Below are positions 2,179-62,362 of a DNA stretch of 64,000 bases, piece after piece (position 1 is the first letter of the stretch; each line of letters starts with the position of its first letter). The stretch lies in assembly GCF_006345805.1 (NCBI RefSeq), contig NC_043008.1:68386001-68450000 (forward strand), in the 5' to 3' direction. The notes under the pieces were generated by a model, which worked only from the letters and a program-made list of their open reading frames with translations, did no database searches and was not told the DNA's origin. The stretch is from Octopus sinensis. Taxonomy: Eukaryota. A program made the position numbers and the translations under genes.

Positions 2179-2179
<1 letters not shown>

Positions 2180-2229
<50 letters not shown>
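2180..2229 (+). repeat. (CA)n microsatellite, representative of many (TA)n, (CA)n, (TAA)n and (GAT)n tracts
   Basis: Direct inspection. Confidence 0.95.
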
Positions 2230-2231
<2 letters not shown>

Positions 2232-2456
2232 TACACATTGTGGGCTCCTTTCAGTTTCTGTTGACCAGATTCACTCATAAGAATTTGTCAACCTGGTACT
2301 ATAATTGAAGATACTTGCTTCCCAACCACATGGTTCTGGGTTCAGTCCAACTGCATAGCACTTTTGGCAAGTATTTTCGATTATAACCTTGGGCTGACCA
2401 AGGCCTTGTGGGTGTATTTGGTTGACAGAAACTGAAAGAAGCCTATTGTGCATATA

Positions 2457-3728
2457 CAGAGTGCAGTGAATAAATTGTCACCTAATTTACACAGAAATCA
2501 AAATAACACTGACATCTCATTTTAAGAGATATATTTACTAAAATTACTTAAAAATATCTTGAAATACTAAAGAGTAAATTTATTTAATAAAATCACGATC
2601 GGCTTCAACCATAGCCTCCGGACGACTTCGGAACCTTCTGTAACTCTGGTCTCCTTGTCTAAGTTGGTGAATGCTGCCATAATCTTTGCCTTCAGTTCAT
2701 CTTTGGTGTTACAAGGAGTTTGGTTAGTTTCTTGCTCAACTGTGCCCCACGCATAATAATCAAAGAGGTTGCAGTCTGGGGAGTTAGGTGGCAAGATGTT
2801 AGGGGTGATGTCGTCACAGAAATTGTCTGACAGCCATGACTGAGTTCTCCTTGTGTAGTATGGTGCAGAGTCCTGTTGCCAGATATAGGGTCTTCCAGCA
2901 GCCACCCTCTTGACCCAGGGCAGCACTACATCCTGCAGGCACTTGATGTAGGCCTCTGCATTGAGTGTGAGGCTGTGTGGGAAGATGAATGGAAGCATAA
3001 TGTCGCCATCATTAGTGATCACTCCAAACACCATGATGTTGACTGGATATTTGATTTTTATCACTCTTGGTACATGTTTTGGGAACATGGCAAGTCAGCG
3101 GTTGTTCTGTGTTCACCATCTGATCTTGGCAGAAACTAAAGCATGTTTGGTTGGAGGGGATGCTTGAGTTTGTTCAAAAGCTTCATAGCATGGTCTCTTC
3201 TCTTGTCCTTGATAGCTTGGGATAAAAATTGGCCCTTTCTCATCTTGTACGGGGAATAGTGAATGTCTTCATGCACTACCTGTCTGGTAAGAAACTCAGA
3301 CACTCCCATGTCCCTGGCAATGGACCTGATTGACCTGGAGGGATCATTGTCAATCATAGCCTAGATCTCACCAACTAATTCAGGAGTTCTTTTCTTATCA
3401 GACCAATCAGAGTGAGTTTTCTGAGCTGCCATACTTTTGTAGTCGCCATTAGACCTATCCAACTCTTTCCAAATCCTCTGCACTGTCCTCAGGTTGACAT
3501 CCAAACACTCTGAAATGTTCATATTGGAGCTTCTGGTGTGAATGCCAAGCAGTACAGCATGTTGTTTCCAAATTTCTGGCTGAGTGAATTGCGTCATGGT
3601 GTTGATTTTCTCACAGACGGTGCCCAACTGACCCTACTATACTGTGTAGTTGACAAAATCAAAAACAAAAAGTGCACATGCACGAAATTAAAAATATAAA
3701 ATGGCGACAATTTACCCATCGTACCCTA
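2457..3728 (-). mobile_element. Degenerate Tc1/mariner element, DD37D (maT-like) family
   Basis: Broken transposase in ORFs 3361-3627, 3136-3357 and 2567-3088 (QQDSAP...PPNSPDCNLFDYYAWG). Imperfect TIRs share taaattgtc(a/g)cc; TA flanks. Confidence 0.9.
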
Positions 3729-3904
3729 TATATATATGCATGCATGCAAGCATGGCTGTGTGGTAAGACGCTTGCTTCCCAACCACATGATTCTGAGTTT
3801 AGTCCCACTCCATGGCACCATGGGCATGTGTCTTCTACTATAGCCTTGGGCCAACCAAAGCCTCGTGAGTGGATCTGGTAGACGGAAATTGAAAGAAGCC
3901 CATC

Positions 3905-3942
<38 letters not shown>

Positions 3943-6737
3943 GTTTGTGTGTCTGTGTTTGTTCCCCTCACCATCACTTGACAACCGATGTTGGTGTGTT
4001 TACATCCCTGTAACTTAGCAGTTTGGCAAAAGAGACCAATAAAATAAGTACTAAGCTTACAAGGAATAAGTCTTGAAGTTGATTCGTTCGACTAAAGGTG
4101 GTGCTCGAACATGGCCACAGTCAAATGCCTAAACCAAATAAAAGAATACATATATACATACATGTGTGTGTCTTTGTGTCTGTGTTTGTTCTCCAACACT
4201 GTTTGACTACAAGTATTGGTGTGTTTATGTTCCCATGACTTAGTGGTTTGGCAAAAGAGATGGAGAGAATAAGAACCAGGATAAAAAAAAAATATTCTTT
4301 CAACTAAAAATTCTTCAGGGCAGTGCACCAGCTTGGCCACAGTCTAATGACTGAAACAAGTAAAAGATAAAAGATATATATTGTCACCTTAGAAACATGT
4401 CTGAAACAATAATGTTCTCAGTCACTCCTTTACAAAGCAGTCAATATTTCTTATAAATGCAGCACCTGTTACTCTAATTGATTGCATTTGTATCATCTTC
4501 CAACATATACTTCACTTACCTGATTGCATGTGTACTGCCCATTGCCATGGAAACTAGTGCCGTCCTTTATACAAATATAATGTCTCTTTGTTTCATCTCA
4601 TTGTTTATATTTATGACAGCCTAACAATTAACCTCCTAAAACAGGCATGGATATGTGGTTAAGGAGTTTGTTACATGTCTATATGACCATGAGTTCAATT
4701 CCATTGTGCAGTGTTAGGTCATCTATATAGCTTTGTTAGTGAAATTCAGGTGGGCTGTTTGTTCCTTGGTGGTAAGTTTCATGTGTAACACTACCTCTTG
4801 ACTCTCAAGTGCTTTTAGCAAACTTTACTCTGTTGCAAGAATCCTAGCCTGCTCTCCAGTCTGAAGTGAACTCTATTTCCTTCTTTCCACCAGTCTTAGG
4901 GTCATGGATGGGGCGTCATGGATGTTGTCCTTCTCTTTCTAACTAAGCTATAGAAAAATAAAAAAGAAAAGAGATCAGAAAGGAACCACTGTACCAGGGG
5001 TTAACACCTGGTTCATAGGTATGGTGCAGGTTTATTTTTATATTCTCAGATGAATCCGGTGGTACCTTGCTAGAAATTGGGTATAATGAGATAATGGGTG
5101 GGTTTAGAGAGAGAGAGGAAAAGAACAGAGCTTAAAAGATGAGAGGTATGTACATTGGGGGAACTTAGAGGATGAGAGAGAAGCAGTTGCAAGTACATTA
5201 GGTAGAGAGAGAGAAGCAGTTGCAAGTACATTAGGTAGAGAGAGAGAGAGATTTTAAATGAAGGAGGGCAGGTATATTGGGTGGAGTTACAGAGAGAGAG
5301 GAGAGGTGGCAGGTACAGTGGATGGAGATAAAGAGAGATTAAAGAAGAGACAGGTGCATCCACCTAAAACACTTGAATACTTACTCCCACCCAAAATTTT
5401 TACCCCTATGTAATAACAGACATTGTAATTAAACTGAAAACAATTGTAAACAGCTTGATTAGTTTATGTATATTGTTTGTTTGTGAATGTAATTAAAATA
5501 AGAATAATTAATATAACAGACATTATTTATTGATATAATTAAAAAATATACTGTTTATTAACACAATTAAAATAAGAATAATGTGAATAAATAACCGGCC
5601 GTATCCGGCCCAAACCTGTTTTATACACAAACTGGTCGGATTTGGCTTCTCACATCTAATCTATATTGTTATGCTAAAAATATACAAGCACATCAAAATT
5701 TCAAAGCTATGAAATATTGTATGATTAATTCAAAACGTGAATAAGCAAAAATTACATTTGGCAGAGTAATCTGAATGCTAAAGAGTTAATGTAGCAGAAT
5801 CATTTATTAATGTGATTTCTGTTATTGATGAATGACCAGCAGCAAGTTTTGTGGTATTTGGTTCCAACTTTGATATAAAGCCATAAAGGCATCCTAAATT
5901 TCCATGCTTCCCTACTTCCATCTGGTTTCAGTTTTTGGCTGTGTGGTAAGAAGCTTGCTTCCACACGGTACTGGGTTCAGTCCCACTGTGTGGAATCTTG
6001 GGCCAGCCAAAGCCTTGTGAGTGGATTTGGTGGATGGAAACTGAAAGAAGCATGTCATATATGTGTGTCTTTGTTTGTCCGCCACCACTGGTGTTGGTGT
6101 GTTTATGCCTTCATATCTTAGCAGTTTGCCAAAAGAGACCATCTAATAAGGTCCAGGCTTAAAAAAAAAGAGAAGTACTGGGGTTGATTCATTTGATTAA
6201 AAAAAAAATTCTTCAATGTGTTGCCCCAGCATGGCCACATTCTCACAACTGAAACAAGTAAAAGATGAAAGTTTGAACACAAATAGTTCAATGACCAGGC
6301 ATGTTTTTATGGAAGATTGCAAATGAGTAACACATTTTTTAGTATGAATTGTGTACAACCAGTGTACAAATGTCAAGGCAAGGAGCCACACACAAACATG
6401 CATCCATCCATCGATTCATTCATTCACCCACACATCCGCTCCTGACCTCTTACAATTTCTGACCAAATATGGAAACCAGATGGTTGTAGAGCAGCTCAGA
6501 AATTTATGACTACTTTTATATCAAAGCTGAAACCCAAATATTTCAATACTTGTTGATAGTCATCAACAACAGGGAAATCACAGAAACAAGCATTAACCCT
6601 TTTGATACCAACTAGCCTGAGACCGTCCCACATTATATGACATAAACTTACTGTTTTGAAGTGGTCTAATCTTCCATCAAGATTTTATGCTAAGTTGACC
6701 CAAACCCTAACAAGAAAGTTATTTTATTAAATTCTTC

Positions 6738-7136
6738 ATGTGGTAAGAAGCTTGCTTACCAACCACATGGTTCCGGGTTCAGTCCCACTGCGTGGCACCT
6801 TGGGCAAGTGTCTTTTACTATAGCCTCGGGCCGACCAAAGCCTTGTGAGTGGATTTGGTAGACAGAAACTGAAAGAAGCCCGTCGTATATATGTATATGT
6901 GTATGTATATATATATATATATATATTTGTGTGTCTGTGTTTGTCCCCCCAACATTGCTTGACAATCGATGCTGGTGTGTTTATGTCCCCGTAACTTAGC
7001 GGTTCGGCAAAAGAGACCGATAGAATAAGTACTAGGCTTACAAAGAACAAGTCCTAGGGTCGATTTCCTCGACTAAAGGTGGTGCTCCAGCATGGTCGCA
7101 GTCAAATGACTGAAACAAGTAAAAGAGTAAAGAGAG
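6738..7136 (+). mobile_element. tRNA-derived SINE, representative of the most abundant family (dozens of copies and fragments in the window)
   Basis: B-box gggttcagtccc, CORE-like caccttgggcaagtg, central (TA)n/(TG)n, 3' ggtgctccagcatgg...gactgaaacaagtaaaaga. Other copies at about 3750-4145, 55944-56350 and 59670-60050 (minus). Confidence 0.85.
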
Positions 7137-7453
7137 TATTTAAAAAATTAATTGAAACAAAGACTGCAAATGTTAAACAGGAATATGGTGACAAATGAGT
7201 TAATATCGCCAATGAACTCAGCCATGAAGTAGAAACATTTCAGAGGAAGTCTTTTTAATTTTTTGTTGATTCAGCCAAACTGACACAAACCAAATTATGA
7301 CCCTTGCTGAGGGATAAAGTATAGTGACTGTATTAGAATTAGAACTGGCAACCATATGGTTAGTAGCTTAGCATCATAACCTCCTGGGTCATGTTCCTCA
7401 CATTGTCTTTCATAATAATAAATGTAATCTTTTCTCTTTTGTTTTCATTACAG

Positions 7454-7640
7454 TCCAAGCATCATGGCATCATTTTGAAAGGCCAAGAGATCATTTTGGA
7501 CATATGTACAGCTGAGAACTGCTGCAATGGGAAGATCCATTGCCCCTTCTGTGATATCAATCACTTCAAACCTACAAAATCACACCGGGTCAGAGATCAC
7601 CTAGAGTTGCTACATCTCTCCTATGCAGTACAAGCTGAAG
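7454..7640 (+). CDS. Zinc-finger gene, first identified coding exon (5'-incomplete); Cys/His module half A1
   Basis: Acceptor cattacAG, donor GTgggt; 187 nt, phase 0 to 1; SKHHGIILKGQEIILDICTAENCCNGKIHCPFCDINHFKPTKSHRVRDHLELLHLSYAVQAE. No in-frame Met, so an upstream exon is missing or unidentified. Confidence 0.85.
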
Positions 7641-7719
7641 GTGGGTACTCAAAGATTTCTTCTTACATAATTCAAGAACTTCTGAGATGGAAGGGATTAT
7701 TGCTGCTGTTGATGCTCAT

Positions 7720-7975
7720 CGCAATTTCCTCTTCCCTCTCTCCTTCCTCCCCTTTCCTCTTCCTCTTTCCTCCACAACTCTTCCTCCTCTCCCATCCTTT
7801 CCTCCATTACTCCTCATACTCCTACTTCTCTCTTTGACCTCTTCCCTTTACTCCTCTCCTTCCTTCCCTTCCCTACTTCTCCCCTCCTATTCCCTTCCTT
7901 CTCCCTTCCTGTTCTTCATTCTCCCCTCCTTGTTCCCCTTCCTCCATCTCCCTCGCCTTCTCCCCCTCTCCCCGT
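7720..7975 (+). repeat. CT-rich low-complexity intronic tract
   Basis: Almost pure C/T for about 250 nt; explains spurious ORF 7687-8151. Confidence 0.85.
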
Positions 7976-8170
7976 GGGTAACCATGGGGATTCCAGATGG
8001 GATGCATTGGCATGGAGTAGGGGTATGGTGGAGGGAAGAAATTGAGTTGGAAAATTTTAAGACTACAAAATTGAAATTGGTGTTAAGATGGTGTGCAGTT
8101 GCATTGTTGATTGTAAAATCATTTCCATATCAGGGACTTGAAACCAAGTAATTTTCTTTACTGATTTCAG

Positions 8171-8301
8171 ATGTAACTATAGTGAAATGTTTCTGGTCTT
8201 GTGGTCAGATAGCTGGACATTATCATTGCCCTTACTGTCCTTCAAAATTGCTGAAGCGCTATGCCTTTACTCTGCACCTACATTCGCATATGAAGAAAAT
8301 G
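8171..8301 (+). CDS. Zinc-finger gene exon; module half B1
   Basis: Acceptor gatttcAG, donor GTatgt; 131 nt, phase 1 to 0; (D)VTIVKCFWSCGQIAGHYHCPYCPSKLLKRYAFTLHLHSHMKKM. Confidence 0.88.
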
Positions 8302-8354
8302 GTATGTAAGTCTTTAAATATTCATTTTAAATTCTATGCTTATATTATGTTTAA

Positions 8355-8540
8355 CCCCTTTGATACCAACCTACTTGAGACTGCCCTGGTTCTACGATAT
8401 AAACTTCCTATTTTAAAACAATCTAAATTAAAACCTTTCTTGTGAATTTATGCTCTCAACTTAATAACGACAAAGCCATTTTGCTAAATTCTTTATTAAT
8501 TGAAACATAGGTAGTGCATTTCAATTTGGTTATGAAAGAG
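8355..8540. mobile_element. Degenerate piggyBac-type MITE (third family)
   Basis: TTAA|cccctttgataccaa ... ttggttatgaaagag|TTAA. A related left end starts at 6597. Confidence 0.6.
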
Positions 8541-8828
8541 TTAAATGTCTTGAGATGAGTCATTGTTTTATATAGTTGTAGTTTTGTGTACTCCTCATGC
8601 CTGTGGCCTAGTAGATAAAAGTGTTACTTTTAGTTTAGAAACTAAGGCTTTGACTTCAAATCCAGTTTGATATTAATCAAAATATAAAATGTTGATTTAA
8701 AAGTTTTTTAATTTTTCATATCTAAAGAGGAGGTTGATAGTCTGAATTGTTAAAGCATTATATGGAATTCCTCATGGCATTTGTTCCAGCTCCCTGCATT
8801 CTTAGTTTAAATTAGTAGCAGCAGCAGC

Positions 8829-8861
<33 letters not shown>

Positions 8862-10364
8862 TAATTATTATTATTATACTACACCTTAACTGTATTCAAC
8901 TTTCCCCATAAACTTGTCTGCTCATCCAACAGTTCATACACAATTCTTTACACACTGATTGTTAAAGATTCATCTGTATTCACAGACTGTATATCTGTAT
9001 TGCTGCCAGCTATCTCACCACATACTACATACAGATAAAGGGTAAAGACCCACTTTGGTCATGAAAGACTATGGTATTGCACCTAGAAAGTTCCCCTCCA
9101 AGATACAAGTCTGGGAAAATTTGTTTATAGAAGACCAGCAGTCACCCATGCATACCAGCCTCCCCTCTCCACACCACCAATATTATCCAAGGGAAAGGTA
9201 AAGGCTGATACAGCTTGGCACTAGTGACATCGCAACTCATCTCTACAGATGAGTGAACGGGAGCAATGTGAAATGAAGTGTCTTGCGCAAGAACACAAAA
9301 CACAGTCCAGTCCAGGAATCAAACACATTACCGCATGAATGTGGGCCCGATGCTCTAACCACTGAGCCATGCACATACACACACATAGAGCAGACTATGT
9401 GATATTGTCTGTCTTGTACCAGAGATAGAGAGACTGTTCATTTATAAAGGATCTTGTATCTAGGAGAAAAAAATATATATTGACTGAAGGCACAGGCATA
9501 GCTTACATATATCAGTATAATAAGAAGTATGCTTCCCAACCACATGGATTTAGGTTCAGTCCCACCGTACAGTACCTAGGACAAATGTCTACTGTTATAG
9601 CCATACCCATGCTTAAATACACATGTATTTATACAAACACACACACACAAACATATGCATGTGTATGTGTGTGTATATATACATATGTGTATGTGTGTGA
9701 TTGTATTGATTTTTGTGCTTTGACTTAGCATGATAGTTGTGAGCAAGTGTCACTGTCATGCAAGCAGTGACTTCTGTTTTCAATCTTCTATGAAAATATC
9801 CTTGGTCATGGGCGAAAATATTACCTTAAAGGTGCAGGTGTGGCTGTGCGGTAAGAAGCTTGCTTCCCAACCAAAAGGTTCTGGGTTCAGCCCCACTGCA
9901 TGGCACCTTGGGCAAGTGTTTTCTACTATAGTCTTGTGAGTGGATTTGGTAGACAGAAACTGGAAGAAGCTCATCATGTGTGTGTGCAGGTCTTTGTGAC
10001 AACCAGTTTTGGTGTGTTTACGTCCTTGTAACTTCACAGTTCAGCAAAAGGGAGTGATAGAATAAGTGTCAGGCTTTAAAAAAGCAAAAAAGAAACAAGT
10101 ACTGGGGTTTGATTCATTCAATTAAAAATTCTTCAAGGTAGTGCCTTGGCATGGCCACAGTCTAATGACTGAAACAAATAAAGGATAAAGATTATTCAGA
10201 AACAGGTGAGGGCTGGTGACAGAAAAGGCATCCAGTCATAGAAAATCAACCTCAGCAATTCTGTCCAACCCATGCAAGCATAGAAAAGTGGATAGTAAAT
10301 GATGATTATGATGATATTTTACATTGAGATGATACTAATGTTTGAATACAATATTTCATTTAAG

Positions 10365-10428
10365 GGCAAGGATAAGAGCTGTATCTCTGTGCCAGATCCA
10401 AAATATCCAAATACTATCAAAGGATATG
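10365..10428 (+). CDS. Zinc-finger gene, small linker exon
   Basis: Acceptor ttcatttaAG, strong donor GTaaga; 64 nt, phase 0 to 1, exactly the phase needed to join 8301 to 14249; GKDKSCISVPDPKYPNTIKGY. Confidence 0.6.
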
Positions 10429-10434
10429 GTAAGA

Positions 10435-10465
<31 letters not shown>

Positions 10466-11004
10466 GAGTGAGAGCAATGCATGCCATCAAAGTGACTCTG
10501 GGGTACAAATATACAATGTCCAGTATACCCATCATGACTACCCATCTGATAAGGGTACATCAGGCACATGCATCACAACCATATGTGCACAACATGGCGA
10601 TCTCATATCAAGATAAACAGCACATAACTTTGCAGGTGGGGCCCAGTTAGAATTCTCTTCACATCAAGTAGCCCATCCTGCCCAAAAGGTTCTTGAATAA
10701 GGGTTGTTTTGAGGTTGATGAATGAAACACCCATGTTTCCATAGATAAATTACTCAAACCCCAAAGAATTCCTCTCAACATCCTCTATGATACTTTCCCA
10801 CTACTCCTGCTGATAATCAAAGATGCACTTATCATCAGCTACTAAAAGACATGCTCAACTGGTTAGGGTCAAGCAACTGACAAGTAAGTATGTGGTACTG
10901 AGCAGAATATTTGCTGTAGTCCATCTTTAATACCAAGACAAAACACTTCCAATCAGTTAAGATCAACAGCCATGAGAGCCACTACCAGATACTGCATCAG
11001 GGCA
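10466..11004 (-). mobile_element. About 540-bp interspersed retroelement-like repeat, copy 1
   Basis: Collinear with 47328-47882 with the same boundaries; flanked by (TTA)n. Confidence 0.75.
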
Positions 11005-14000
11005 TTTTATTATTATTGTTACTGTCTTTATGTATTTTTCCCTTTGTTTGTTTTTACATCTGTTTTTACATAAGCTAGATCAGTGGTCCTCAACTGGGAT
11101 CCATATAAGATTTTTGGTGGTTCACACAAGATACTAGTAAATTGCGGAACTACACAACAAAATAATAAATTGGGAATCCACAATATTATTTTAAGGGCCC
11201 CTGAAAAATTTTTTGCTATAAAGATATGTATTACTATGTATTGCAGGAAACATTTAGATTTCTTTCTCTAACATTTTATGTAGTTCAACCTACACAAGGA
11301 AATGTGTGGAAAGCAAAATAGGAATTTGAAAGAAATTTCTATAAAACTAATTTTTAAACATTGATTGGTTATGGTGGGGAGGAGGTCCACCAGAATAAAA
11401 CAGTAAAAGGGTCAATAAATAAAAAATGGTTGAGAACTCCTGGGCTAGATGAATATATTATAGAGAAATTGTTTCATGGCCGAATATCCTTCTTGCTGCT
11501 AACCCTGTCCTATTTTCTTTAATGGGTTATCTTATTCTGCACATCTTTGAGACATAAAGCTGGTGAGAGGGAGAAATGATAGCAAGTCAGTACTCATAGC
11601 TGAGTGGTTTTTGGGAGAAGTGTAAATATAAATAAATGCTCAGACATACACATCACACATCACATGCACACATACATGCACACACACGCACACACAGAGG
11701 CAGAGGCACAGGTATGAATGTATGGTTCAGTTCACTTTCCAATTATGCACATTCAGTCCCACTGTGTAACACCTTGGGTAAGGTGTCCCACTGCGCAGTA
11801 ACAAAGACAAATGTCTACTGTTAGAGCCATAAAGCTAGCAGTTCATTCAGTGACAAGAAGTGACAGCAATTCACTGCTTATGGCTGAGTGATTTTGGAGA
11901 ATTAAATATAAACGAATGCAAACACACACATACACACACTGTCTAGCCATCTCTCATTCTCCCCACACTCTCTTCTATTTACCTTGTGCATTGCAGGCAC
12001 ACTCTGACTCTTTACAGTGCTTTGTCTCTATTTCCAGCTCCACCCTGATTATTCCAACTCATCATCATGATACGTCCATATTCCATAGGTGACGGTTTGA
12101 TAGGAGCTACCCAGCTGAAGAGCTGCCTGGTCTCCAAGTCTGCTTTGGCATGGTTTCTACAGCTGGATGCCCTTCCTAATGCCAATCACTTTACAGAGTA
12201 TATAGGGTGCTTTTATGCAGCACCAGCACAGGTGCTTTTACATGATACTAGTACAGATGCTTTTATGTGGCACCAGCACTTGTGCTTTTTATGTGATACC
12301 AGCACCCATGAACTCATATAAACAATTATCTGTCTATCTATCTGTCTGACTGTCTCTGTCTCTCTCTACATCTATCTAAATGTCATCATCATCATCTAAT
12401 GTATGTTTTCCATGTTGGCGTGGGTTGAACTGTTTGACAGGGGCTGGCCAACTGAAGAGCTCCTCAGGTTCCATGTCTGTTTTGGCATGGTTTCTACAGT
12501 TGGATGCCCCTTCCTAATGCCAACCACTTCCAGTTTACAGAATGTACTGGGTGCTTTTATGCAGCATTGGCATGGGTGGTTTCACATGGCACCAGCACCC
12601 ACAGGCCTGCAAGATGAGGATCACTCAGTTGAAGAGGGATGCAGGGACATGTCTGTATGCAAGGTCAACTGCAATTTTACTTAGCTTGACGTGTCTTCTC
12701 AAGTACAGCAAATTGCCAGAAGTCTTGGTCCCTTGCCATCCCTGCTGTGAACCCAATGTCAGAAGATCCTTTCTCATCACTGTGTCCCATGTCTAATGCA
12801 AGATAACCATGTATCTCCTCTACAGCAAAATACCTGTTCCTGTCCCTCTCAACACCTAGCATAAAAGCCACATCCTTCTCAACCAAACTTTCACTCAGTT
12901 GAGAGGTCTCTTTAGTCTTGTGAGTTACTTGGTAACCCTTATTAGTGCTAATAACACGGAAAAAAAAAGGCATCCAGCTGTAGAAATCATGCTAAAACAA
13001 ACAAATGGAGCTCAGGCAGGGCAGCTCCAGCTGGCTGGCTCTTGTCAACCGTCCAACCAATGCCAGCATGGAGAATGGAATTTACATGACGATGATGATA
13101 GTGTATAGTAGATACAATAAAGAAATAGCAGAAGAAAGCACAGGTCCTGCAAAAGCCATGTACAAGGGGAGATGTATGCCATTTTAAAGTTAGTAGTTTG
13201 CAGAGAACCAAGACTTGATATGTAATGCATAATTAGGAGTGGGTAATAGCAGAAACAACTTACACTAAATTTCATAAGCCATTCAGATGACTCACCAGAT
13301 GTAAATGATACTTGCTCTTATCTTAGTGACTTAAATTAGAGCTGAATGGAGATGTCGTGAAAGCAGAGTAGCTAGAGTAGCAGTGGTAGTTGTTAAGGAA
13401 TTCTTGCCAAGAGTTCCTCTATTGATGCAAAAAGCAGACTGCCTGTGTACGAAGTGTGATGCAGCATTGTAGTATGATGTGAAACTGAATGTGTAAGATC
13501 TATGGAGACAGGAGAAGAATGAGGTTAGTATGATCTGTAGGAAAGGCTGACTATATAAATGAACTGAAATAGTGACAGCATATTAAAGCCATCAATACAT
13601 AGGAGATCTAATTATATTGGTATGGATATGTGAAATGAATAGATGGTGAATATTGGAGTGAAAGTACTCTCTTTGTTCATCAGTAGGGAACATTTGCGGA
13701 AGGAGGACACTTAGGAGGAAGTGGGACACCAGATCTCAGGAAACTGGGCACTGCATATCTTCTGATGAAAGACTAAAATGAGATGTGATAAATTGTAGTG
13801 CGGACCTATGACACTGTGAAAGAACAGATCCTAAAATCTTGATGATGATGAGGATGCTGATGTGTAAGGATAAACAATTAAGTATTTAGCGATCCTCTAG
13901 CTGGTCTAGGGGAGCAGTAACTTCAGAAAATAATTGACTTGGGCTGTGATGATTCATCCACTTCATACAACTGTGGAAAGTGGGTATAAAACAGGAATGA

Positions 14001-14248
14001 TGATGATTATCGTAAATGATAGATATATTTGGTTCTTGACTTTTTGATGTTCAGGGAGAAGATATGTTACTCTAGCTAAATGATATCTCAATATCTGTGA
14101 AATGGTGATAAGCTTTATTAACCTCATGAGCTTAGGGCAATAGACGTTGTAAAGATCATGTTTCTTCCAACTGTCTTTAATGGACTAAGTACTTTGGTCT
14201 TTCACTCTTTTTGACGATTTGAGAAAAAAAATTTCCATCTTTGTTCAG

Positions 14249-14583
14249 GTAAAGAAATCCATCTTTGTAAGAATGAATCATGTTATAAAACTGCAAATGT
14301 GAAAACTACTTCGGATGCAGCGACCCCTGCTGATGGGGAGAAGGCTTCAGAATCTTCAGCTGATACTTCTACAGTTGATGTACAAAGATCTGGACCACAT
14401 TATCATTGCCCACTTTGCAATGTTCTGCGAAACCGACGGAGTCCACTCATTAACCATCTATGGCGCTGCATGGAACAGCCTCGCAATTCCAAAGCACTGA
14501 CAGACAATTGGAAAAAGGCTACAATACTTTTGGAAAAAGATTTTGAGAAAGTTCCTCATCCTCGTGATGTTGAAGGTTTAAAG
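14249..14583 (+). CDS. Zinc-finger gene exon; B-type finger with long insertion
   Basis: Acceptor ctttgttcAG, donor GTaagc; 335 nt, phase 1 to 0; KEIHLCKNESC...SGPHYHCPLCNVLRNRRSPLINHLWRC...VEGLK. Confidence 0.85.
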
Positions 14584-14971
14584 GTAAGCTAACCAATGTC
14601 CTTGCTTTGTTTCTCATTAAATCCTTTACTTTTATGTAGTGGCTCATTAAAAATGGATGAAGATTTAGTAGATTTAGTGCAGTTAATTTCTCCATTTGTT
14701 GCAGCTATATGTATGGTGCTTAATTTATAAATCTCTCCAGAAGGATGATCAACAAGGCCAACCCTCTTGTTGGATTTGAATCCAAAATTTTGATAAATAT
14801 AAACTAAATATTGTAATTAGTCCAATTCAATATCATTTTGCTGTAGAATGTCAGATATCATTTAACTTAGAATGTAGTGTCCACCAATCTGTTGTATGTA
14901 CCCTAATAACAAATTGCATTTATATTTCATGTAGTAATGTAACCTCAGTCTATGTCTCTATTATTTTCTAG

Positions 14972-15155
14972 TATCACCAGTCCATTGTACGTACCCTGAA
15001 TGATCTACCCATGGAAAAGTGCTATGCTCCTGACTGTAACTGTGGCCATAAGTACCATTGTCCCTTGTGTACAAAAGAGAAATTCAAACCCAATTTCTTG
15101 CAACACCTTCAGTACCATTACTATGCTCACTGGAAGAGACGGATCCAATATAAAG
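14972..15155 (+). CDS. Zinc-finger gene exon; module half A2
   Basis: Acceptor ttattttctAG (in-frame alternative AG ending at 14980), donor GTacag; 184 nt, phase 0 to 1; ...MEKCYAPDCNCGHKYHCPLCTKEKFKPNFLQHLQYHYYAHWKRRIQYK. Confidence 0.87.
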
Positions 15156-15169
15156 GTACAGAGATAACC

Positions 15170-15610
15170 CACTTGTACTCACTGGTGGTCTGTCTCACTA
15201 TATCTCATTAGTACTCTAGTCTACTGTATCTCACTAGTACTTTATTCTACTAAATCTCACTGGTACACTATTCCACTATATCATACTAGTGCTTTATTTC
15301 ACTAAATTTCATTGGTACTCTGTCTCCTATCTTACTTGTACTCATTGATACTCTGTTCTACTAATCTCACTAGTACTTTATTCCACTAAATCTCACTTGT
15401 ACTCACTGATACTCTTCCTCTAATGATCACTGATAACTTTCTCTCACTGATACTCTATTCCACTATATCTCACTCGTACTCTATTTATATGCATTGATAC
15501 TTTATCCTAATATACCTCGGATACTCTATTCCATTACATCCCACTGATACTCACTGGTACTCTGTCTCACTGACTCTTGGTCCTACTGTATCTTGTTGAT
15601 ACTCTATCTT
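15170..15610 (+). repeat. Degenerate approximately 26-bp minisatellite at the intron 5' end
   Basis: Recurrent ctcactagtactttattccactaaat-like units starting just after donor 15156. Confidence 0.75.
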
Positions 15611-16351
15611 ATTTAACGATGACTAGGTCACTTATGACAGGCATTGATGCATAGTAGTAAATAATATGATTACAAAATAAAAGTGAATATAATTGGAAAT
15701 TTGTTTTTTAAATTCCAATCATAGCTCTGCTATGATGCAATATCAGAAACAGGTTTTGGAAAGTATACAATTATATTACATATGGGCACAATACTTTTAC
15801 ATTTCTCTTCATTGTTTAAGTTGAGGGTGTCTTTATATATATATATATGCATTGTACACTTGTAAAGGTTTCCTCTGTACATATATAGAAATGGAAAAGT
15901 ATATATTTTATCTTTTATCTCTTGTTTCAGTTATTGGATTGTGGCCATGTCGAAGTACTACCTTAAAGTGTTTAATTGAACGATTTGACACTAATACTTA
16001 TTTTTAAAGCCTAGTACTTAATCTGTCAGTCTCTTTTACTGAACCACTAAGTTAGTGGGATGTAAACAAACCAAAACTGGTTGTCAAGCAGTGGCAGGAC
16101 ACGCATACACACACGTATATGTGTATGTATGTATGTATATGTATATATATGTGTGTATGTGTGTGTACATATGACATGTTACTTCACAGTTTGTTTACCA
16201 AATTTGTTCATACATATAGTCGAAATCACTTGCTCAGAGTGTCACAGTGGGACTGAACCTGAAACCATATGGTTGGTTGCAAATCAAGCTTCTTAACTAC
16301 ACAGCCATGATTACTCCTAATTATATATTTTATTTTTATTCTATTTTACAG

Positions 16352-16761
16352 AATACTCAGTGCTCCTCTGTAACGGACGTTGTGAGCTTGAGAAAGGTTG
16401 TAATAAAATCCGCTATCACTTTCACTGCCCCATTTGTGGATCGACCCGCCGGCGGCGCAAAAGCTTTGCTCGTCATTTAAAAATCTGTCCTGGGTCTGTC
16501 TGTATGAAAGTCTTGAAGCAGAACGAGTCGAGTGTAACAGCAATAGAGAATTTTTCTATCAATGGAGAATCTGGGCAGAAACTAGAACAGGAAAAGACGA
16601 ATGCTGATGTGGACCTGTCGCCTTCATTTCTTGTGGCTGAAAACGGTAACATTGGAGGGAATGAGCAAACTGGGGAACCACCATCTGAAGTAACATGTGA
16701 TGATAAGGATGTTGAGGAAGGTGAAGTGTTATGTGAACCAAAATCCTTGGAAGATTTTCAG
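16352..16761 (+). CDS. Zinc-finger gene exon; module half B2 plus acidic linker
   Basis: Acceptor ctattttacAG, donor GTatct; 410 nt, phase 1 to 0; (E)YSVLLCNGRCELEKGCNKIRYHFHCPICGSTRRRRKSFARHLKIC...EDFQ. Confidence 0.88.
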
Positions 16762-19700: not shown

Positions 19701-19907
19701 GTCTATGAACATGTGATTGCCAAGTTGTCTAATAAATGTCTCGATGCTCTTCGGGATAAAGGCAACATTGAGGAGATCTTTTCTGATATTGCCCTACGTA
19801 CTGGTGCTGAATTGATTTGGAGCGAAGGAGAACTGGGAAGTCTTCCTGTACATGAATTAGTTGGAAATCTGAAAGTTCTAGAAATGTCAAAAGACTTGGT
19901 GTTAAAA
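19701..19907 (+). CDS. Zinc-finger gene exon; possible degenerate KH-like domain
   Basis: Acceptor atttttgcAG, donor GTaaga; 207 nt, phase 0 to 0; VYEHVIAKLSNKCLDALRDKGNIEEIFSDIALRTGAELIWSEGELGSLPVHELVGNLKVLEMSKDLVLK. Confidence 0.85.
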
Positions 19908-20770
19908 GTAAGAATTTCACTTCTAGCTTTGCAGAGAAAAATCAAAGATTTAAAAATGACAAAACAAGAAAAAAAAAACCCAGACAAGAGTCAATAATGA
20001 TTTCAGAAATTTTTGTTTGATTTTTCATTAGCTAATACATAGTCTAATACTGGGGCATTTAAGCCTGTGACTGAAAAAGAAATGGGTATAAGTACACAGG
20101 AATTTAGCCCACACCTCTTATTTTACAATATATTTTGCACTCTTATCACAAAAATAAGAGGGAGGTGTGGGTTTGATTCCCACTCATTCTAATAATCATT
20201 TTTTCCATTGGGGGCTTATATGCCCCTATATAACACCATTTTCTTTAGCCAATACATAGTAAACGCTTATAAGCTTAAAGCTTAAAATAATTATTTGCAG
20301 AATATATAAATAAGCATTGCTGTCATACAAATTATGTCTTTGGTTTCCAATCTTCTATGTATTTCATCACATCGTCCCACTGTCATCTCACTACACCTCT
20401 TGTGCATTTACAGACTCTATTATTTCCCTGTCACTTTTACTCATAAGCATCAACTACTACTTCTTTGTATGGGATCTTTCATCTTTCATACATTCTTTCT
20501 CCAGATTGTCCTCTTGTCTTTGAGTCTATCCTGCCCTTACTCTGAGGTCAGTGATCACTAGTTTATTTGAGTGTTTTATATATATATATATATATCATCA
20601 TCATCATCATCATCATCATCGTTTAACGTCCGCTTTCCATGCTAGCATGGGTTGGACGGTTCAACTGGAGTCTGGCAAGCCCGAAGGCTGCACCAGGCCA
20701 GTCAGATCTGGCAGTGTTTCTACAGCTGGATGCCCTTCCTAACGCCAACCACTCCGAGAGTGTAGTAAGA

Positions 20771-20818
<48 letters not shown>

Positions 20819-20867
20819 GTTACTTTCTTTACTGTATACTCATATTTTCTCTAAACACACATTGTAA

Positions 20868-23483: not shown

Positions 23484-26200
23484 ATTTGTACCCAAAGAAT
23501 TGTATGGATGCTAGCATACAAGTTGAAGTCAGCCTGCTGTCAGAACAGAGAATTCCACCTTCACTTGAAATGAATCCCTCCAACACAGTTAATGGTGATA
23601 AAACGCCAGAAAACACCTATTCTAACCAGTCTTCAAAGCAACTGAACAAACGGGCATTAAATAATTCTGACAAAGATACAAGAGTTACTTTGAAAGAATA
23701 CAGCTCCAAAAGATCTAAAGACAATGGTGAGAAACATCCTGAGAGTCCAGCAGCTAGTTTGGTGGCCTCACCATCTTCTCCCAGAAAACGTGGGCGGCCT
23801 CGAAAGCTAAACAACTGTTTGAACCCAAGCAATATTAAAGTTCGAAAAGTTGACTCAACCATAGAAGATTTACAAAGTCCAGGTGCTAAAACAATCAAAA
23901 GGAAAAGAGGAAGGCCAAGGAAAGAGATTAGCAATAAAGTTAATGCTTCTGAAGAAACTGTTTATGAAAAAGATCTTGATGATGCCGATGACATGACCCC
24001 AGATGCTGATAGTCACCTGTTAAATAGCAAACGCTATTCTACCCGTGGGAAGAAAATTGATTTCTCATTCCTCGTGGGAAAACCCAAGAAAAGCGAACTC
24101 TTTAAAATGAACTCTGAAAATGGTTTAAATGATTCAAGTGATGAAGACTCTCCATCTTCAGAAACAGTTGGTGCCAGTTGTTCAGACAGTGGTAAACCTG
24201 ATGAGGCTATGTTAATTGATGACAGTTCTGAAACTAATAAACTCACAAATGATGAGAGTAACACTAGTAGTAGTATTAATGATAATAATAAGAACAATGA
24301 TAATGATAAAGTAACTGTTCAAAGTGATACTGTTAGTCAGAAGAATTCTAAAGCATCTTCAACTAGTGCTAATCCTTCGAAATCAAAAGATTCTAGCAAA
24401 AAACCTAAATCCCGTGTTTTCAAGCCATTAGTAATGTCAGATGTTGCTGTATTACCTACCATCCGGGATTTATTCACTTCCAAAAAAAGGCAAAGACAGA
24501 GAAATAGGAATGATTTGAAGTCTGAATTAGCTGCAGCTGGTATAAGTGGTCGGGGACCATCATCATCCTTATCATCATCATCTACTAGTGAAGTAAATTC
24601 CAGGTATGCTGGGAACACCTTTAATCAAACTCCTAAAACTACAGAATCAAAACAGCTTTCATCTCACACTTATGACCTGCTTTGTCACTTGTGTGGCTTA
24701 CAGGATAATCAATTTGATATAATTACCGAACATTTAAGGCAAGAACACAACATAGAAAACCCATTGCGTTGTGATGTCTGTCAAAGAACTTTCGATCGAT
24801 TGTTTGACTTAAAGAGTCATCTGTCTCGTAAACATGGACCATTTCCCCAGTTAGCTATTGTTCACTGTTCTGTGTGTGGCAAAAGCTTTCAGGGTACTGC
24901 CAAACTGAATTGGCACATGAGTTTTATGCACAAAATTACTAAGGAACCCGATCCCAAAAAGACTTCTATGAAATGTAATCAATGCAGTTTTGTGGCTCCG
25001 AACTATTCTGCTTTGATTAATCACAAAGAAACTCATGTAGATGATTCTAAGTTGTGCAATTTATGTGGGAAACTCTTTTCAAAAGGGAACCATTTAATTA
25101 CTCATATTCAGGCTGTTCACACAAAAGAGAAAGCAGCTCAGTGTAAGCAGTGTGGTAAACAGTTCAATCATATACGTTACCTCCGCACTCACATGAAACG
25201 ACATGAAGGCATTAAGAAACATGAATGCAACTTATGTGGCTGGCGTTTCTTTGAAAGCAATACTCTTAAAGACCATTTAGAAACTCACAAAGACGTTAGC
25301 AAACGAAAATATCGTTTTACTTGTGACTATTGTGGTCAGAAACACATCAGTAAAGCTAATTTCAATGATCATCTTAACAAACACACCGGCAACAAACCTC
25401 ACAAATGTCAGCTGTGTGGCAAAGGGTTTGCTTTCCGCACAATGTTGATGAAACATCAGATTCATATCCACACTACAGAGAAACCATTTAAGTGTACATG
25501 TTGTGATCGAGCATTTAAATTTAAGTCGAAACTTATTCAACACATGGTCATTCATACTGGAATCAGTAAATATGTATGTCAGAACTGTAACAAACCATTT
25601 TCATGTTCAGCTACACTGAAACACCACCAACCTCGTTGTAAAGGAGATAAATCATGGCAGCAGAGCAGAACGGTTATCAGTGATGGAATGACATTAACAG
25701 TTGATGGACTTCAACTGGAACAACAGCAGGTAGAGTCTGGTGAAAACATTGCCATTCCAGTGGGGGATCAAAACGACATTGTCATCGATATGTCAAACCT
25801 ATCTGGTATCCCAGAAGGCAACATTCTGCAGGCTGCTGCACAGGCTGCTCAGCTGATGGAGATGCCAGAAGTGTTTATGTGTAGTGAGTGTAATGCTGTC
25901 TTCTCTTCTCTAGCACATGCTGAGAGCCATGTAACCACATGTCGTATTGATGTTGCTACTATCGACACACCAAACATTGAAATAAAGGTGTTAGACGACC
26001 AACAGAATACAAGCTTTGTTGAAACAGCAATTTCTGTTGATAATACCTCCACCATTGCTGTTGATAATTCCACCACAATTGCTGTTGATAATTCTGCCGC
26101 AATTGCTGTTGATAATTCCTCCACGATTGCTGTTGATAATTCCTCCACGATTGCTGTTGATAATTCTTCCACAATTGCCATTGATAATTCCTCCAACTGA
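23484..26200 (+). CDS. Zinc-finger gene terminal exon: AT-hooks, 10 C2H2 + 2 C2HC fingers, octapeptide tail
   Basis: Poly-T tract + cAG acceptor, phase 1; long ORF (provided 23486-26200). Two RGRPRK AT-hooks; CxxC-x12-H-x3/4-H fingers with TGNKP and TTEKP linkers; ends TGA at 26198-26200. Confidence 0.95.
26030..26197 (+). repeat. Coding 24-bp tandem repeat x7 (consensus peptide IAVDNSST)
   Basis: Seven consecutive attgctgttgataattcctccacN-like units directly before the stop codon. Confidence 0.95.
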
Positions 26201-61697: not shown

Positions 61698-62362
61698 GTA
61701 ATGGAAATATATTCTTCTGTAATGGCACCAACAATAACCTTCCATTCCTTATACTTTACCTCCATTATTATCATCATCATCATCAACAACACCCCTTTTC
61801 TCTGATTCTTGTTTTAGATGAATATATTATTGAGGCATTTTTTTGCTGCTGGAAACTCTGCTCTCTTTTTTTCACACTACTTTGAAGGCACAAAGCCAGC
61901 AGATGAATCTTTGTCTGCTTTCCATGCTAGGGGAAATAACATCAGTGCTCACAACTCAGTGATTTTTGGAGAAGTGTAAATGTAAGCAAGCACACACAGT
62001 TCCATAGCCTTTTAACTATGGGATCTGGTGTGGCCCCTAGCCTTGCCAGCCCCTGTCAAGCCGTCCAACTCATACCAATATGGAAAAGAGACATTAAAGG
62101 ATGATGACAATGATATAACAAGTTTCTTTCAGTTTCTATCCAGTTTTATCAGACCAGAAAAACACATTCGTCCAAGATGATGATCAGTGGGACTGAACCT
62201 GGAAACTAGAAATCATGTGGTTGAGCAGTAAACTTGTTAACCATACAGCCATGTGTGCATCTGTGGATTAGATTTTTAACTTATTGTAAACACTATCTGA
62301 GTTATTGGGAATAATAAACTTGGTGTCTAATGCGCGCTCGCACTTGTGTATATATATATATA

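What the first reader, a model, noticed from the sequence alone, without database searches (positions are those of the whole stretch)
7454..16500. Duplicated two-exon Cys/His module (C-C-HxHCPxC-H-H/C) fused to a C2H2 transcription factor
Seen: exons 7454-7640 and 14972-15155 align (CxAxxC-C..KxHCPxC....FKP......H...H....Q) and both have phase 0-1. Exons 8171, 14249 and 16352 all carry hydrophobic-xC-x3/4-C...H(Y/F)HCPxC-x12-H-x3-H/C and phase 1-0. The N-terminus is therefore A-B, linker, B', A-B, built by exon-level duplication. Known: a CxnC-HxHC-C-H-H double zinc-site layout resembles Castor/CASZ1-type fingers. Inference from memory, untested: the A+B unit also resembles Cys/His clusters in uncharacterised fish proteins linked to Zisupton/KDZ transposons, so it may be a domesticated transposon module. 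A gene with 9 or more exons is also unlike typical exon-poor cephalopod C2H2 cluster genes.
Basis: partly seen in the sequence, partly recalled or inferred. Interest (0 to 1): 0.7.

Follow-up and report, generated by a model that had tools for sequence, protein, structure and literature searches.

The report
Undescribed multi-zinc domain shared with Zisupton transposons
The repeated Cys/His "two-exon module" is real: it is one compact ~95-residue zinc-binding domain, absent from Pfam and without a solved-structure match, present 2.5 times at the front of a conserved mollusc/brachiopod C2H2 transcription-factor gene and also at the front of fish Zisupton-type transposon proteins.

Summary
Exons A (7454-7640, 14972-15155) and B (8171-8301, 14249-14583, 16352-16761) have the stated motifs and phases. 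A1B1 versus A2B2 gives BLASTP E=1e-13. With a 64-nt linker exon, a middle exon and the last exon they splice into an open 1438-aa frame, colinear with a 1428-aa Argonauta protein.

A+B is one domain, not two. A profile of it finds 328 proteins (E<=1e-3), nearly always as a whole unit. AlphaFold2 gives pLDDT 95. Pfam and Foldseek against PDB give no significant match.

The gene is an old, uncharacterised orthologue in cephalopods, gastropods, bivalves and Lingula. The unit duplication predates the split of the first three groups.

Fish and amphioxus proteins carry the domain N-terminal to the KDZ-associated CxC4 cluster. One killifish protein also has SAP and a weak, sub-threshold Ulp1-protease match; close relatives pass that threshold. 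The phase-1 intron between A and B sits at the same codon in octopus, Aplysia, Polypterus, salmon and loach.

Not shown: the direction of transfer (domestication versus capture), DNA binding, the 5' exon, and any RNA evidence. The CASZ1 resemblance gained no support.

The parts
7454..7640 (+). Exon A1 (phase 0-1): first half of domain unit 1. Reads C-x4-CC-x4-H-C-P-F-C-x15-H-x4-H and ends AVQAE + G of the split Asp codon.
   Evidence: Sequence and splice sites. 87% identical to Argonauta P0003 residues 10-71.
8171..8301 (+). Exon B1 (phase 1-0): second half of unit 1. Reads VTIVKC-x3-C-x5-H-Y-H-C-P-Y-C-x12-H-x3-H.
   Evidence: 98% identical to P0003 residues 72-114.
10365..10428 (+). Linker exon (64 nt, phase 0-1), GKDKSCISVPDPKYPNTIKGYG. 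Probably the vestige of an A exon: same phases, and its end is predicted to form the same beta-hairpin with the start of B'.
   Evidence: tblastn of P0003. Splice sites. Conserved PDxKxP...hxxxG in all mollusc orthologues. AlphaFold2 strands 131-134 and 137-140. The domain profile extends into it from about profile position 46.
14249..14583 (+). Exon B' (phase 1-0): a B-type half-unit, IHLC-x4-C...HYHCPLC-x12-H-x3-C. It holds a cephalopod-specific ~30-aa Ser/Thr/Asp-rich insert and is followed by a long predicted helix.
   Evidence: Insert absent from bivalve and gastropod orthologues and predicted disordered.
14972..15155 (+). Exon A2 (phase 0-1): first half of unit 2.
16352..16761 (+). Exon B2 (phase 1-0): second half of unit 2 (C-x3-C...HFHCPIC-x12-H-x3-C), then an acidic low-complexity stretch.
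19701..19989 (+). Middle exon (phase 0-1), VYEHVIAKLS...; 69% identical to Argonauta, with visibly similar stretches in bivalve orthologues. No Pfam family.
   Evidence: bivalve sequences read.
23484..26200 (+). Last exon (phase 1 to stop): two RKRGRPRK AT-hook-like motifs, the conserved RYSTRGKKIDFS motif, a C2H2 array and a lone C-terminal finger. Stop codon included.
26028..26195 (+). In-frame 24-nt x 7 tandem repeat (TIAVDNSS units) forming the extreme C-terminus. Absent from the Argonauta orthologue.

Best explanation
Exons A and B together encode one compact domain of about 95 residues, inferred to bind several zinc ions.

Zinc sites, inferred from conserved ligands (coordinates were not inspected):
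- C24, C27, H43, H48: a long-spacer C2H2-like finger (the A finger).
- C63, C67, H73, H75: a small cluster.
- C76, C79, H92, H/C96: a classical beta-beta-alpha C2H2 finger (the B finger). It shares the HxHC string with the cluster before it.
- C12, C17/18, H23: a fourth cluster, present in molluscs and fish only.

The two halves look like old duplicates of each other.

The domain is bilaterian-wide and undescribed. It occurs in three settings:
- at the N-terminus of fish and amphioxus Zisupton/KDZ-type transposon proteins;
- as tandem arrays with no other recognised domain;
- fused to C2H2 arrays in several lineages.

The window holds the cephalopod copy of a gene conserved in molluscs and Lingula. 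Its layout is [A-B][vestigial A - B'][A-B], a conserved middle region, AT-hook-like motifs and a C2H2 array. The tandem units arose by duplication of the two-exon unit before cephalopods, gastropods and bivalves split.

Inferred mechanism (not shown): the domain binds nucleic acid. In the transposon proteins it would take the N-terminal DNA-recognition role. In this gene it would add DNA or chromatin contacts to a C2H2/AT-hook transcription factor. The most likely history is an ancient exchange between a Zisupton-like element and a host gene, with TE-to-host somewhat favoured.
For: One domain:
- The 4-unit profile found 328 proteins at E<=1e-3 and 100 at E<=1e-10 in 1.84 billion representatives. 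It is matched end to end, profile positions ~2-98, in almost all of them.
- AlphaFold2 on 55 units gives mean pLDDT 95 and pTM 0.82, with helices carrying the His pairs.
- Invariant or near-invariant ligands are listed.

Undescribed:
- No Pfam family for the module.
- A PDB sequence profile search gives only weak C2H2 hits to the B finger, best E=0.0017.
- Foldseek gives no hit with E<2 in PDB (TM<=0.32) or E<0.7 in BFVD.

Orthologues:
- The same N-terminal layout and C-terminal array occur in Argonauta, Sinanodonta, Solemya, Ylistrum, Mercenaria, Gigantopelta, Patella, Haliotis and Lingula. All are named 'uncharacterized' or 'hypothetical'.

Old duplication:
- NJ clades for unit 1 (bootstrap 93) and unit 2 (bootstrap 69).

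Transposon link:
- PF18717 CxC4 scores 38-47 bits (cut-off 26.9) in module-bearing P0017, P0057, P0077, P0099, P0111 and P0167.
- P0167 has the module (20-99), CxC4 (660-775), SAP (20.1 bits, cut-off 23.9) and Peptidase_C48 (17.9 bits, cut-off 20.7). The last two are sub-threshold.
- Relatives P0170 (partial B only) and P0173 (no module detected) score C48 at 25.3 and 35.2 bits, above cut-off. P0173 also has CxC7.
- Several of these fish clusters hold 11-25 near-identical members.

Shared gene structure:
- The codon just before h-h-h-x-C is split G|AT, G|AA or G|AG (phase 1) in octopus units 1 and 2, Aplysia, Polypterus, Salmo and Paramisgurnus.

DNA binding (indirect):
- Basic residues at K33, R39, R41, K62 and K85 in 53-71% of units, and at R86 in 95%. 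K85/R86 are the -1/+1 helix positions of the B finger.
- Mean net charge is +8.3 per unit.
- Partner domains are C2H2, THAP, SAP, SWIM, PHD and AT hooks.
Against: - No experiment or RNA-seq was available. Zinc stoichiometry and DNA binding are inferred.
- The model's coordinates could not be inspected, so the ligand grouping comes from conservation only.
- The KDZ catalytic Pfam model did not hit any module-bearing protein scanned. The transposon link therefore rests on CxC4, on SAP and Ulp1 (sub-threshold in the one protein that also has the full module), and on copy number. TIRs and TSDs were not examined.
- The Polypterus CxC4 gene is a single multi-exon locus between host genes. At least some 'Zisupton-like' carriers are therefore themselves host genes.
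- No CxC4 partner was seen in the protostome hits scanned, and deep nodes of the unit tree are unresolved. The direction of transfer is open.
- Only the best 150 of 328 hits could be listed.
- The net charge of individual units ranges from -9 to +20.
Confidence: 0.62

Rival explanations
1. Reverse direction. The domain is an old bilaterian host-gene domain that chordate Zisupton-like elements, or host genes derived from them, captured. The octopus gene was never transposon-derived.
For: - The spiralian gene is old, probably single-copy, multi-exon and conserved.
- The protostome carriers that were scanned lack CxC4 and Ulp1.
- The Polypterus carrier is a syntenic multi-exon gene between EMC4 and a CAP_GLY/UCH gene.
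- The conserved intron is what a host-gene origin would predict.
Against: - The domain's patchy fusions to unrelated partners (C2H2 arrays, THAP, TINF2_N, PHD, SWIM, CxC4/Ulp1) and the multi-member fish clusters are typical of transposon-borne domains.
- DNA transposons carry their introns with them, so the intron does not discriminate.
Confidence: 0.25
2. The domain is a protein-protein module, or a ubiquitin/SUMO- or histone-binding module, rather than a DNA binder. It would recruit or oligomerise partners in both the transposon proteins and this transcription factor.
For: - Weak sub-threshold Pfam similarities to UBZ_FAAP20 and zf-Di19.
- An Sgf11 zinc-finger hit just above cut-off in a Ptychodera unit, 29.7 versus 26.4 bits.
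- The conserved, non-diversifying helix residues argue against sequence-specific DNA reading that diversifies between paralogues.
- Co-occurrence with a SUMO-type protease in fish relatives.
Against: - Strong positive charge and 95%-conserved basic residue at R86, with K85 basic in 69% of units, at canonical DNA-contact positions of the B finger.
- N-terminal placement as in other transposase DNA-binding domains (established knowledge for THAP in P elements and BED in hAT).
- The partners are mostly DNA-binding domains.
Confidence: 0.2
3. Artefact. The similarity is generic Cys/His richness of degenerate C2H2 fingers, and the 'gene' merges a short N-terminal gene (as in the 265-aa Aplysia protein) with a separate downstream C2H2 gene.
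For: - The first protein search returned only two short gastropod proteins, 265 and 268 aa.
- No transcript evidence was available.
Against: - Nine full-length orthologues of 1182-1612 aa from mollusc species, plus Lingula P0004 (1440 aa), share both ends.
- The Aplysia model stops at assembly gaps directly after B'.
- All eight exons join in frame.
- Profile E-values reach 1e-69, and the A-B unit folds with pLDDT 95.
Confidence: 0.03

Closest known systems
N-terminal region of fish and amphioxus Zisupton/KDZ-type proteins (module + CxC4 + SAP + Ulp1/Peptidase_C48; e.g. Nothobranchius P0167, Boleophthalmus P0017, Polypterus P0099)
   Same: - The same ~95-residue domain, full length, at E=1e-10 to 1e-29.
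- The same invariant Cys/His ligands.
- The same phase-1 intron between the two halves.
   Different: - The octopus protein has no CxC4, CxC7, SWIM, SAP or Ulp1 domain.
- It carries 2.5 tandem units followed by AT-hook-like motifs and a C2H2 array.
- It is a conserved orthologue, not a multi-copy family.
Classical TFIIIA/Krueppel-type C2H2 zinc finger (PF00096)
   Same: - The B finger is C-x2-C-x12-H-x3-H/C, with hydrophobic residues in the canonical places and a predicted beta-beta-alpha fold.
- Weak hits to Helios, ZNF496 and CTCF fingers.
   Different: - It scores below the Pfam cut-off (14 versus 25.2 bits).
- It is welded to a preceding C-x3-C-x5-H-x-H cluster and to a long-spacer finger (x15, H-x4-H), forming one globular domain.
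- It is not a beads-on-a-string repeat.
- There is no whole-domain match in PDB.
Transposase-derived zinc-finger DNA-binding domains reused by host transcription factors (THAP from P elements, BED from hAT, FLYWCH, WRKY-GCM1)
   Same: - The same evolutionary pattern. A zinc domain sits at the N-terminus of transposon proteins and is repeatedly fused to host factors. Here the partners are C2H2 arrays, THAP, PHD and TINF2_N.
- This comparison rests on established knowledge of those families.
   Different: - No sequence or fold similarity to any of them was found.
- DNA binding is untested here.
Castor/CASZ1 para-zinc-fingers
   Same: Only the general idea of extra Cys/His ligands placed before a C2H2 finger. 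This is recalled from memory.
   Different: - Nothing in the Pfam, PDB-sequence or profile searches pointed to CASZ1.
- No direct comparison was possible, because no CASZ1 sequence was at hand.

Membership tests
Mollusc/brachiopod orthologue group of 'LOC115217962'-type uncharacterised C2H2 proteins | N-terminal A-B, PDxKxP linker, B', A-B layout with conserved ligands | tested here: met
   Alignment of nine mollusc N-termini has 54 invariant columns, including all the ligands. tblastn shows colinearity with the window.
Mollusc/brachiopod orthologue group of 'LOC115217962'-type uncharacterised C2H2 proteins | C-terminal C2H2 array plus a lone terminal finger, homologous over more than 400 residues | tested here: met
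   The window's last exon versus P0003-P0012 and Lingula P0004 scores 233-1033 bits.
Zisupton/KDZ transposase or a gene derived from one | KDZ DDE transposase core | tested here: not met
   Pfam on the full 1438-aa model finds only C2H2 and a weak AT hook. The core was also not detected in the fish carriers scanned.
Zisupton/KDZ transposase or a gene derived from one | KDZ-associated Cys clusters (CxC1-7), SWIM finger, Ulp1/SUMO protease | tested here: not met
   None in the octopus protein. They are present in fish and amphioxus proteins that share the A-B domain or in their close relatives.
Zisupton/KDZ transposase or a gene derived from one | Terminal inverted repeats, 8-bp target-site duplication, multiple copies | not tested
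   This does not apply to a conserved single locus. Fish element termini were not examined. Cluster sizes of 11-25 hint at many copies. The TIR and 8-bp TSD criteria come from PMC12730594.
Classical C2H2 zinc finger (PF00096) | C-x2-4-C-x12-H-x3-5-H with a beta-beta-alpha fold, scoring above the Pfam gathering cut-off | tested here: inconclusive
   The pattern and predicted fold are met for the B finger. The Pfam score is 14 bits against a cut-off of 25.2. The A finger has a 15-residue spacer.
Castor/CASZ1-type fingers | Sequence similarity to the CASZ1 finger repeats | not tested
   No CASZ1 sequence or model was available. No search pointed to it.

The most novel reading that the evidence does not exclude
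The A-B domain is the DNA (terminal-repeat) recognition domain of Zisupton-type transposases. On this reading the mollusc/brachiopod gene is a transcription factor more than 500 million years old that was built from such an element, which would make it the first Zisupton-derived host gene outside vertebrates. It would still carry the transposon's own phase-1 intron, and its fold would be a new type of zinc finger binding three or four zinc ions.
Probability: 0.3. Interest if true: 0.65.

Novelty: new member of a known kind. Interest (0 to 1): 0.5.

Why it matters
- It defines a widespread domain that is not annotated: no Pfam family, 328 significant profile hits across bilaterian phyla, and a very confident predicted fold with no solved relative.
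- It gives a handle on a conserved spiralian transcription factor that every genome annotation calls 'uncharacterized'.
- It links that factor to Zisupton-type transposon proteins. Derived host genes of this superfamily have so far been reported in fish and other vertebrates (PMC3424704).
- The identical intron position from octopus to salmon is a rare structural marker. It could help trace exchange between transposons and host genes.
- If the domain binds DNA, it may be the unknown end-recognition module of Zisupton elements.

Tried and rejected
- **Word-indexed protein search with the 55-unit domain profile**. It returned one fragment only, so the word index is too coarse for this domain. 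The exhaustive profile search was what worked.
- **Alternative GTAAGT donor at 8305.** It would join B1 directly to B' in frame. I rejected it because all orthologues contain the linker exon.
- **GTAAGA at 19908 as the donor of the middle exon.** Rejected. It would leave phase 0 against a phase-1 acceptor at 23484, and Argonauta reads through the equivalent stretch. The donor A|GTCAAT at 19989 restores the frame. It is a weak site and needs RNA confirmation.
- **The 265-aa Aplysia protein as a free-standing A-B-B' gene.** Rejected, because runs of N begin about 400 nt after its last exon.
- **Start-codon exon.** A scan of 1-7453 for ATG...GT mini-exons gave nothing credible.
- **Iyer et al. 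2014 (KDZ) and Boehne et al. 2012 (Zisupton).** Neither paper is held. Their domain descriptions could not be checked against this module.
- **Genomic loci for P0167, P0168, P0010 and P0174.** Not on record.
- **The window's spliced A1B1 as the first row for structure prediction.** The 92%-identical Argonauta unit was used instead.


Full report
**1. What is in the sequence**

The window is AT-rich eukaryotic DNA (GC 0.31-0.47). It holds a multi-exon gene on the + strand.

| Exon | Coordinates | Phase |
|---|---|---|
| A1 | 7454-7640 | 0-1 |
| B1 | 8171-8301 | 1-0 |
| B' | 14249-14583 | 1-0 |
| A2 | 14972-15155 | 0-1 |
| B2 | 16352-16761 | 1-0 |

Their translations carry the described Cys/His patterns. 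Spliced A1B1 and A2B2 align at 29% identity over 104 residues with BLASTP E=1e-13. A weaker second alignment pairs an A half with a B half at E=0.002.

**2. Gene model**

A 1428-aa Argonauta hians protein (P0003, GAB1606033.1, labelled 'LOC115217962') maps colinearly onto the window. It adds three more pieces:

- a 64-nt linker exon at 10365-10428, phase 0-1;
- a middle exon at 19701-19989;
- the last exon at 23484-26200.

The eight exons give 4317 nt and an open 1438-aa frame.

The exon with the start codon (MSEQEDTTLQ in Argonauta) was not found upstream. The donor at 19989 (A|GTCAAT) is weak. No RNA data were available.

Pfam sees only the C-terminal C2H2 array and a sub-threshold AT hook in the whole protein.

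**3. A and B are one domain**

A profile of four A-B units was run against 1.84 billion cluster representatives. It found 328 proteins at E<=1e-3, 100 at E<=1e-10 and 15 at E<=1e-30. In nearly all of them the match covers profile positions ~2-98 as a single unit.

Ligand conservation across 55-61 units from many phyla:

- invariant: C24, C27, H43, H48, H73, C76, C79, H92;
- at least 90% conserved: C63, C67, H75;
- position 96 is His or Cys;
- an extra N-terminal C12/C17-18/H23 group is present in molluscs and fish only.

AlphaFold2 on the Argonauta unit, which is 92% identical to the window's A1B1, gave mean pLDDT 95 and pTM 0.82. Two helices carry the His pairs, and a beta-hairpin sits across the A/B junction.

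From the conservation I infer three zinc sites, or four in molluscs and fish. The string H-x-H-C closes one site and opens the next.

**4. The domain is not described**

- No Pfam family matches the module even at E<=1.
- A PDB sequence profile search finds only marginal C2H2 hits to the B finger (best E=0.0017, Helios).
- Foldseek finds nothing with E<2 in PDB (TM<=0.32) or E<0.7 in BFVD.
- The B finger is a classical C-x2-C-x12-H-x3-H/C finger by pattern, but the whole is a different, larger unit.

**5. The gene is an old orthologue, and the duplication is old**

Proteins with the same A-B / PDxKxP linker / B' / A-B N-terminus, a similar middle region and the same C-terminal array exist in:

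- Argonauta;
- four bivalves (Sinanodonta, Solemya, Ylistrum, Mercenaria);
- three gastropod genera (Gigantopelta, Patella, Haliotis);
- Lingula, with 5-6 units.

All are named 'uncharacterized' or 'hypothetical'. Module-plus-C2H2 proteins also occur in an annelid (Owenia) and in nemerteans (Lineus, Tubulanus).

In an NJ tree, mollusc first units form a clade with bootstrap 93. Second units form a clade with bootstrap 69, which excludes the Gigantopelta second unit. The A-B duplication therefore predates the cephalopod/gastropod/bivalve split. Deeper nodes are unresolved.

The short Aplysia and Babylonia proteins found first are not evidence for a stand-alone gene. The Aplysia model has the same A | B | linker | B' exons and then runs into assembly gaps.

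**6. The linker is probably a decayed A exon**

- It has the A-exon phases (0-1).
- The domain profile aligns into its C-terminal end, from about position 46.
- In the AlphaFold2 model of Argonauta residues 1-360 (mean pLDDT 77), its last residues and the start of B' form the same hairpin as the A/B junction of a full unit (strands 131-134/137-140 versus 67-69/72-74).

The ancestral layout was probably three full two-exon units. This is an inference.

B' in cephalopods also has a ~30-residue Ser/Thr/Asp-rich insert. Other molluscs lack it, and it is predicted disordered.

**7. Link to Zisupton/KDZ transposons**

The domain is bilaterian-wide. It occurs in teleosts, Polypterus, sturgeon, amphioxus, Ptychodera, a crinoid, a scorpion, crustaceans and extra Patella paralogues.

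Pfam results on the long carriers:

- P0017 (Boleophthalmus), P0057 (Brachyhypopomus), P0077 (amphioxus), P0099 (Polypterus) and P0111 have PF18717, 'CxC4 like cysteine cluster associated with KDZ transposases'. Scores are 38-44 bits against a cut-off of 26.9.
- These proteins share homology over 500-800 residues beyond the module.
- A profile of them retrieved a fish family whose clusters often hold 11-25 near-identical members.
- P0167 (Nothobranchius, 1571 aa) has the full module at 20-99 and CxC4 at 660-775 (47.3 bits). Its SAP (20.1 bits, cut-off 23.9) and Peptidase_C48/Ulp1 (17.9 bits, cut-off 20.7) matches are below their cut-offs.
- P0170 has only a partial B half, with CxC4, SAP (25.7 bits) and C48 (25.3 bits) above cut-off. 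P0173 has no detectable module, with CxC4, C48 (35.2 bits) and CxC7.

Zinc fingers plus a SUMO-type protease are, from my own knowledge of Boehne et al. 2012, the hallmark of Zisupton. That paper is not held in the library. PMC12730594 confirms that Zisupton is the KDZ member characterised with TIRs and 8-bp TSDs. PMC3424704 states that Zisupton-derived genes exist in fish and other vertebrates.

**8. Conserved intron**

The codon just before the h-h-h-x-C start of the B half is split after its first base, which is phase 1:

| Species / locus | Split codon |
|---|---|
| Octopus unit 1 | G\|AT |
| Octopus unit 2 | G\|AA |
| Aplysia | G\|AT |
| Polypterus CxC4 gene | G\|AT |
| Salmo salar | G\|AG |
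| Paramisgurnus CxC4 gene | G\|AT, with a GC donor |

The 'two-exon module' is therefore an ancestral property of the domain's coding sequence. It is shared by host-type and transposon-type carriers across the protostome/deuterostome divide.

It does not fix the direction of transfer, because DNA transposons move with their introns.

**9. Mechanism**

Shown: a conserved, confidently folded Cys/His domain, and its partner domains.

Inferred: nucleic-acid binding. The grounds are:

- its position at the N-terminus of transposase-type proteins, where THAP and BED sit in other superfamilies (established knowledge);
- its construction from C2H2-like fingers;
- basic residues at K33, R39, R41, K62 and K85 in 53-71% of units, and at R86 in 95%. 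K85/R86 are the canonical -1/+1 helix positions of the B finger;
- a mean net charge of +8.3 per unit;
- partners that are mostly DNA-binding domains.

A protein- or ubiquitin/SUMO-binding role is the main functional rival. Sub-threshold UBZ and Di19 similarities, and an Sgf11 hit just above cut-off, point that way.

**10. Verdict**

- exon-level duplication: yes, but ancient;
- Zisupton/KDZ link: yes;
- 'domesticated': plausible but not shown;
- CASZ1 resemblance: no support.

The finding is a new member of a known kind, namely zinc-finger domains shared between transposases and host transcription factors. It has a fold that is not yet described and an unusual conserved-intron marker.

Noticed in passing
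window 26028-26195: An in-frame 24-nt x 7 tandem repeat (88% matches) encodes TIAVDNSS units at the very C-terminus of the protein. The Argonauta orthologue ends without it, so it is a recent coding microsatellite-like expansion.
   Followed up: partly
window 14290-14390 (inside exon B'): A cephalopod-specific ~30-residue Ser/Thr/Asp/Ala-rich insert sits between the Cys pair and the HYHC of B'. It is absent from bivalve and gastropod orthologues and predicted disordered (pLDDT<50).
   Followed up: partly
window 2567-3088 (- strand): A 173-aa ORF resembles the C-terminal part of a Tc1/mariner-type DDE transposase (Pfam DDE_3, E=9e-4, below cut-off). It is probably a transposon remnant upstream of the gene.
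   Followed up: partly
window ~12400-12681 (+), 20627-20851 (+), 62302-62925 (-); also 62363-62678: The same translated motif (...AWVGRF/ELFDRG...QLDALPNANH...) recurs in ORFs at several places. This indicates an interspersed repeat family. The last copy contains a 157-nt x 2 tandem duplication (98% matches).
   Followed up: no
window 7700-7960 (intron 1): A ~260-nt almost pure C/T (polypyrimidine) tract lies in the intron between A1 and B1. It produces long spurious ORFs rich in Leu/Ser/Pro/Phe.
   Followed up: no
L004 6170-6790 (Paramisgurnus dabryanus): The conserved phase-1 intron of the domain uses a GC-AG splice pair here (GAAG|GCAAGT), instead of GT-AG.
   Followed up: no
L001 8001-23910 (Polypterus senegalus): The module+CxC4 protein P0099 is encoded by a ~16-kb gene of about 7 exons, between EMC4 and a CAP_GLY/UCH (CYLD-like) gene. 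A copy at least 90% identical exists in Erpetoichthys. It looks like a host (possibly domesticated) gene rather than an active element.
   Followed up: partly
P0016 (Ptychodera flava) residues 568-593: The B finger of one hemichordate unit scores above the Pfam cut-off for the Sgf11 zinc finger (29.7 versus 26.4 bits). This is a possible distant relationship, or convergence, with the SAGA deubiquitinase-module finger.
   Followed up: no
window 19701-19989: The middle exon encodes a stretch with no Pfam family. It is 69% identical to Argonauta, and a visibly similar stretch occurs in bivalve orthologues (e.g. IFESVTAVVS... in Solemya). It may be another undescribed small domain of this gene family.
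   Followed up: partly
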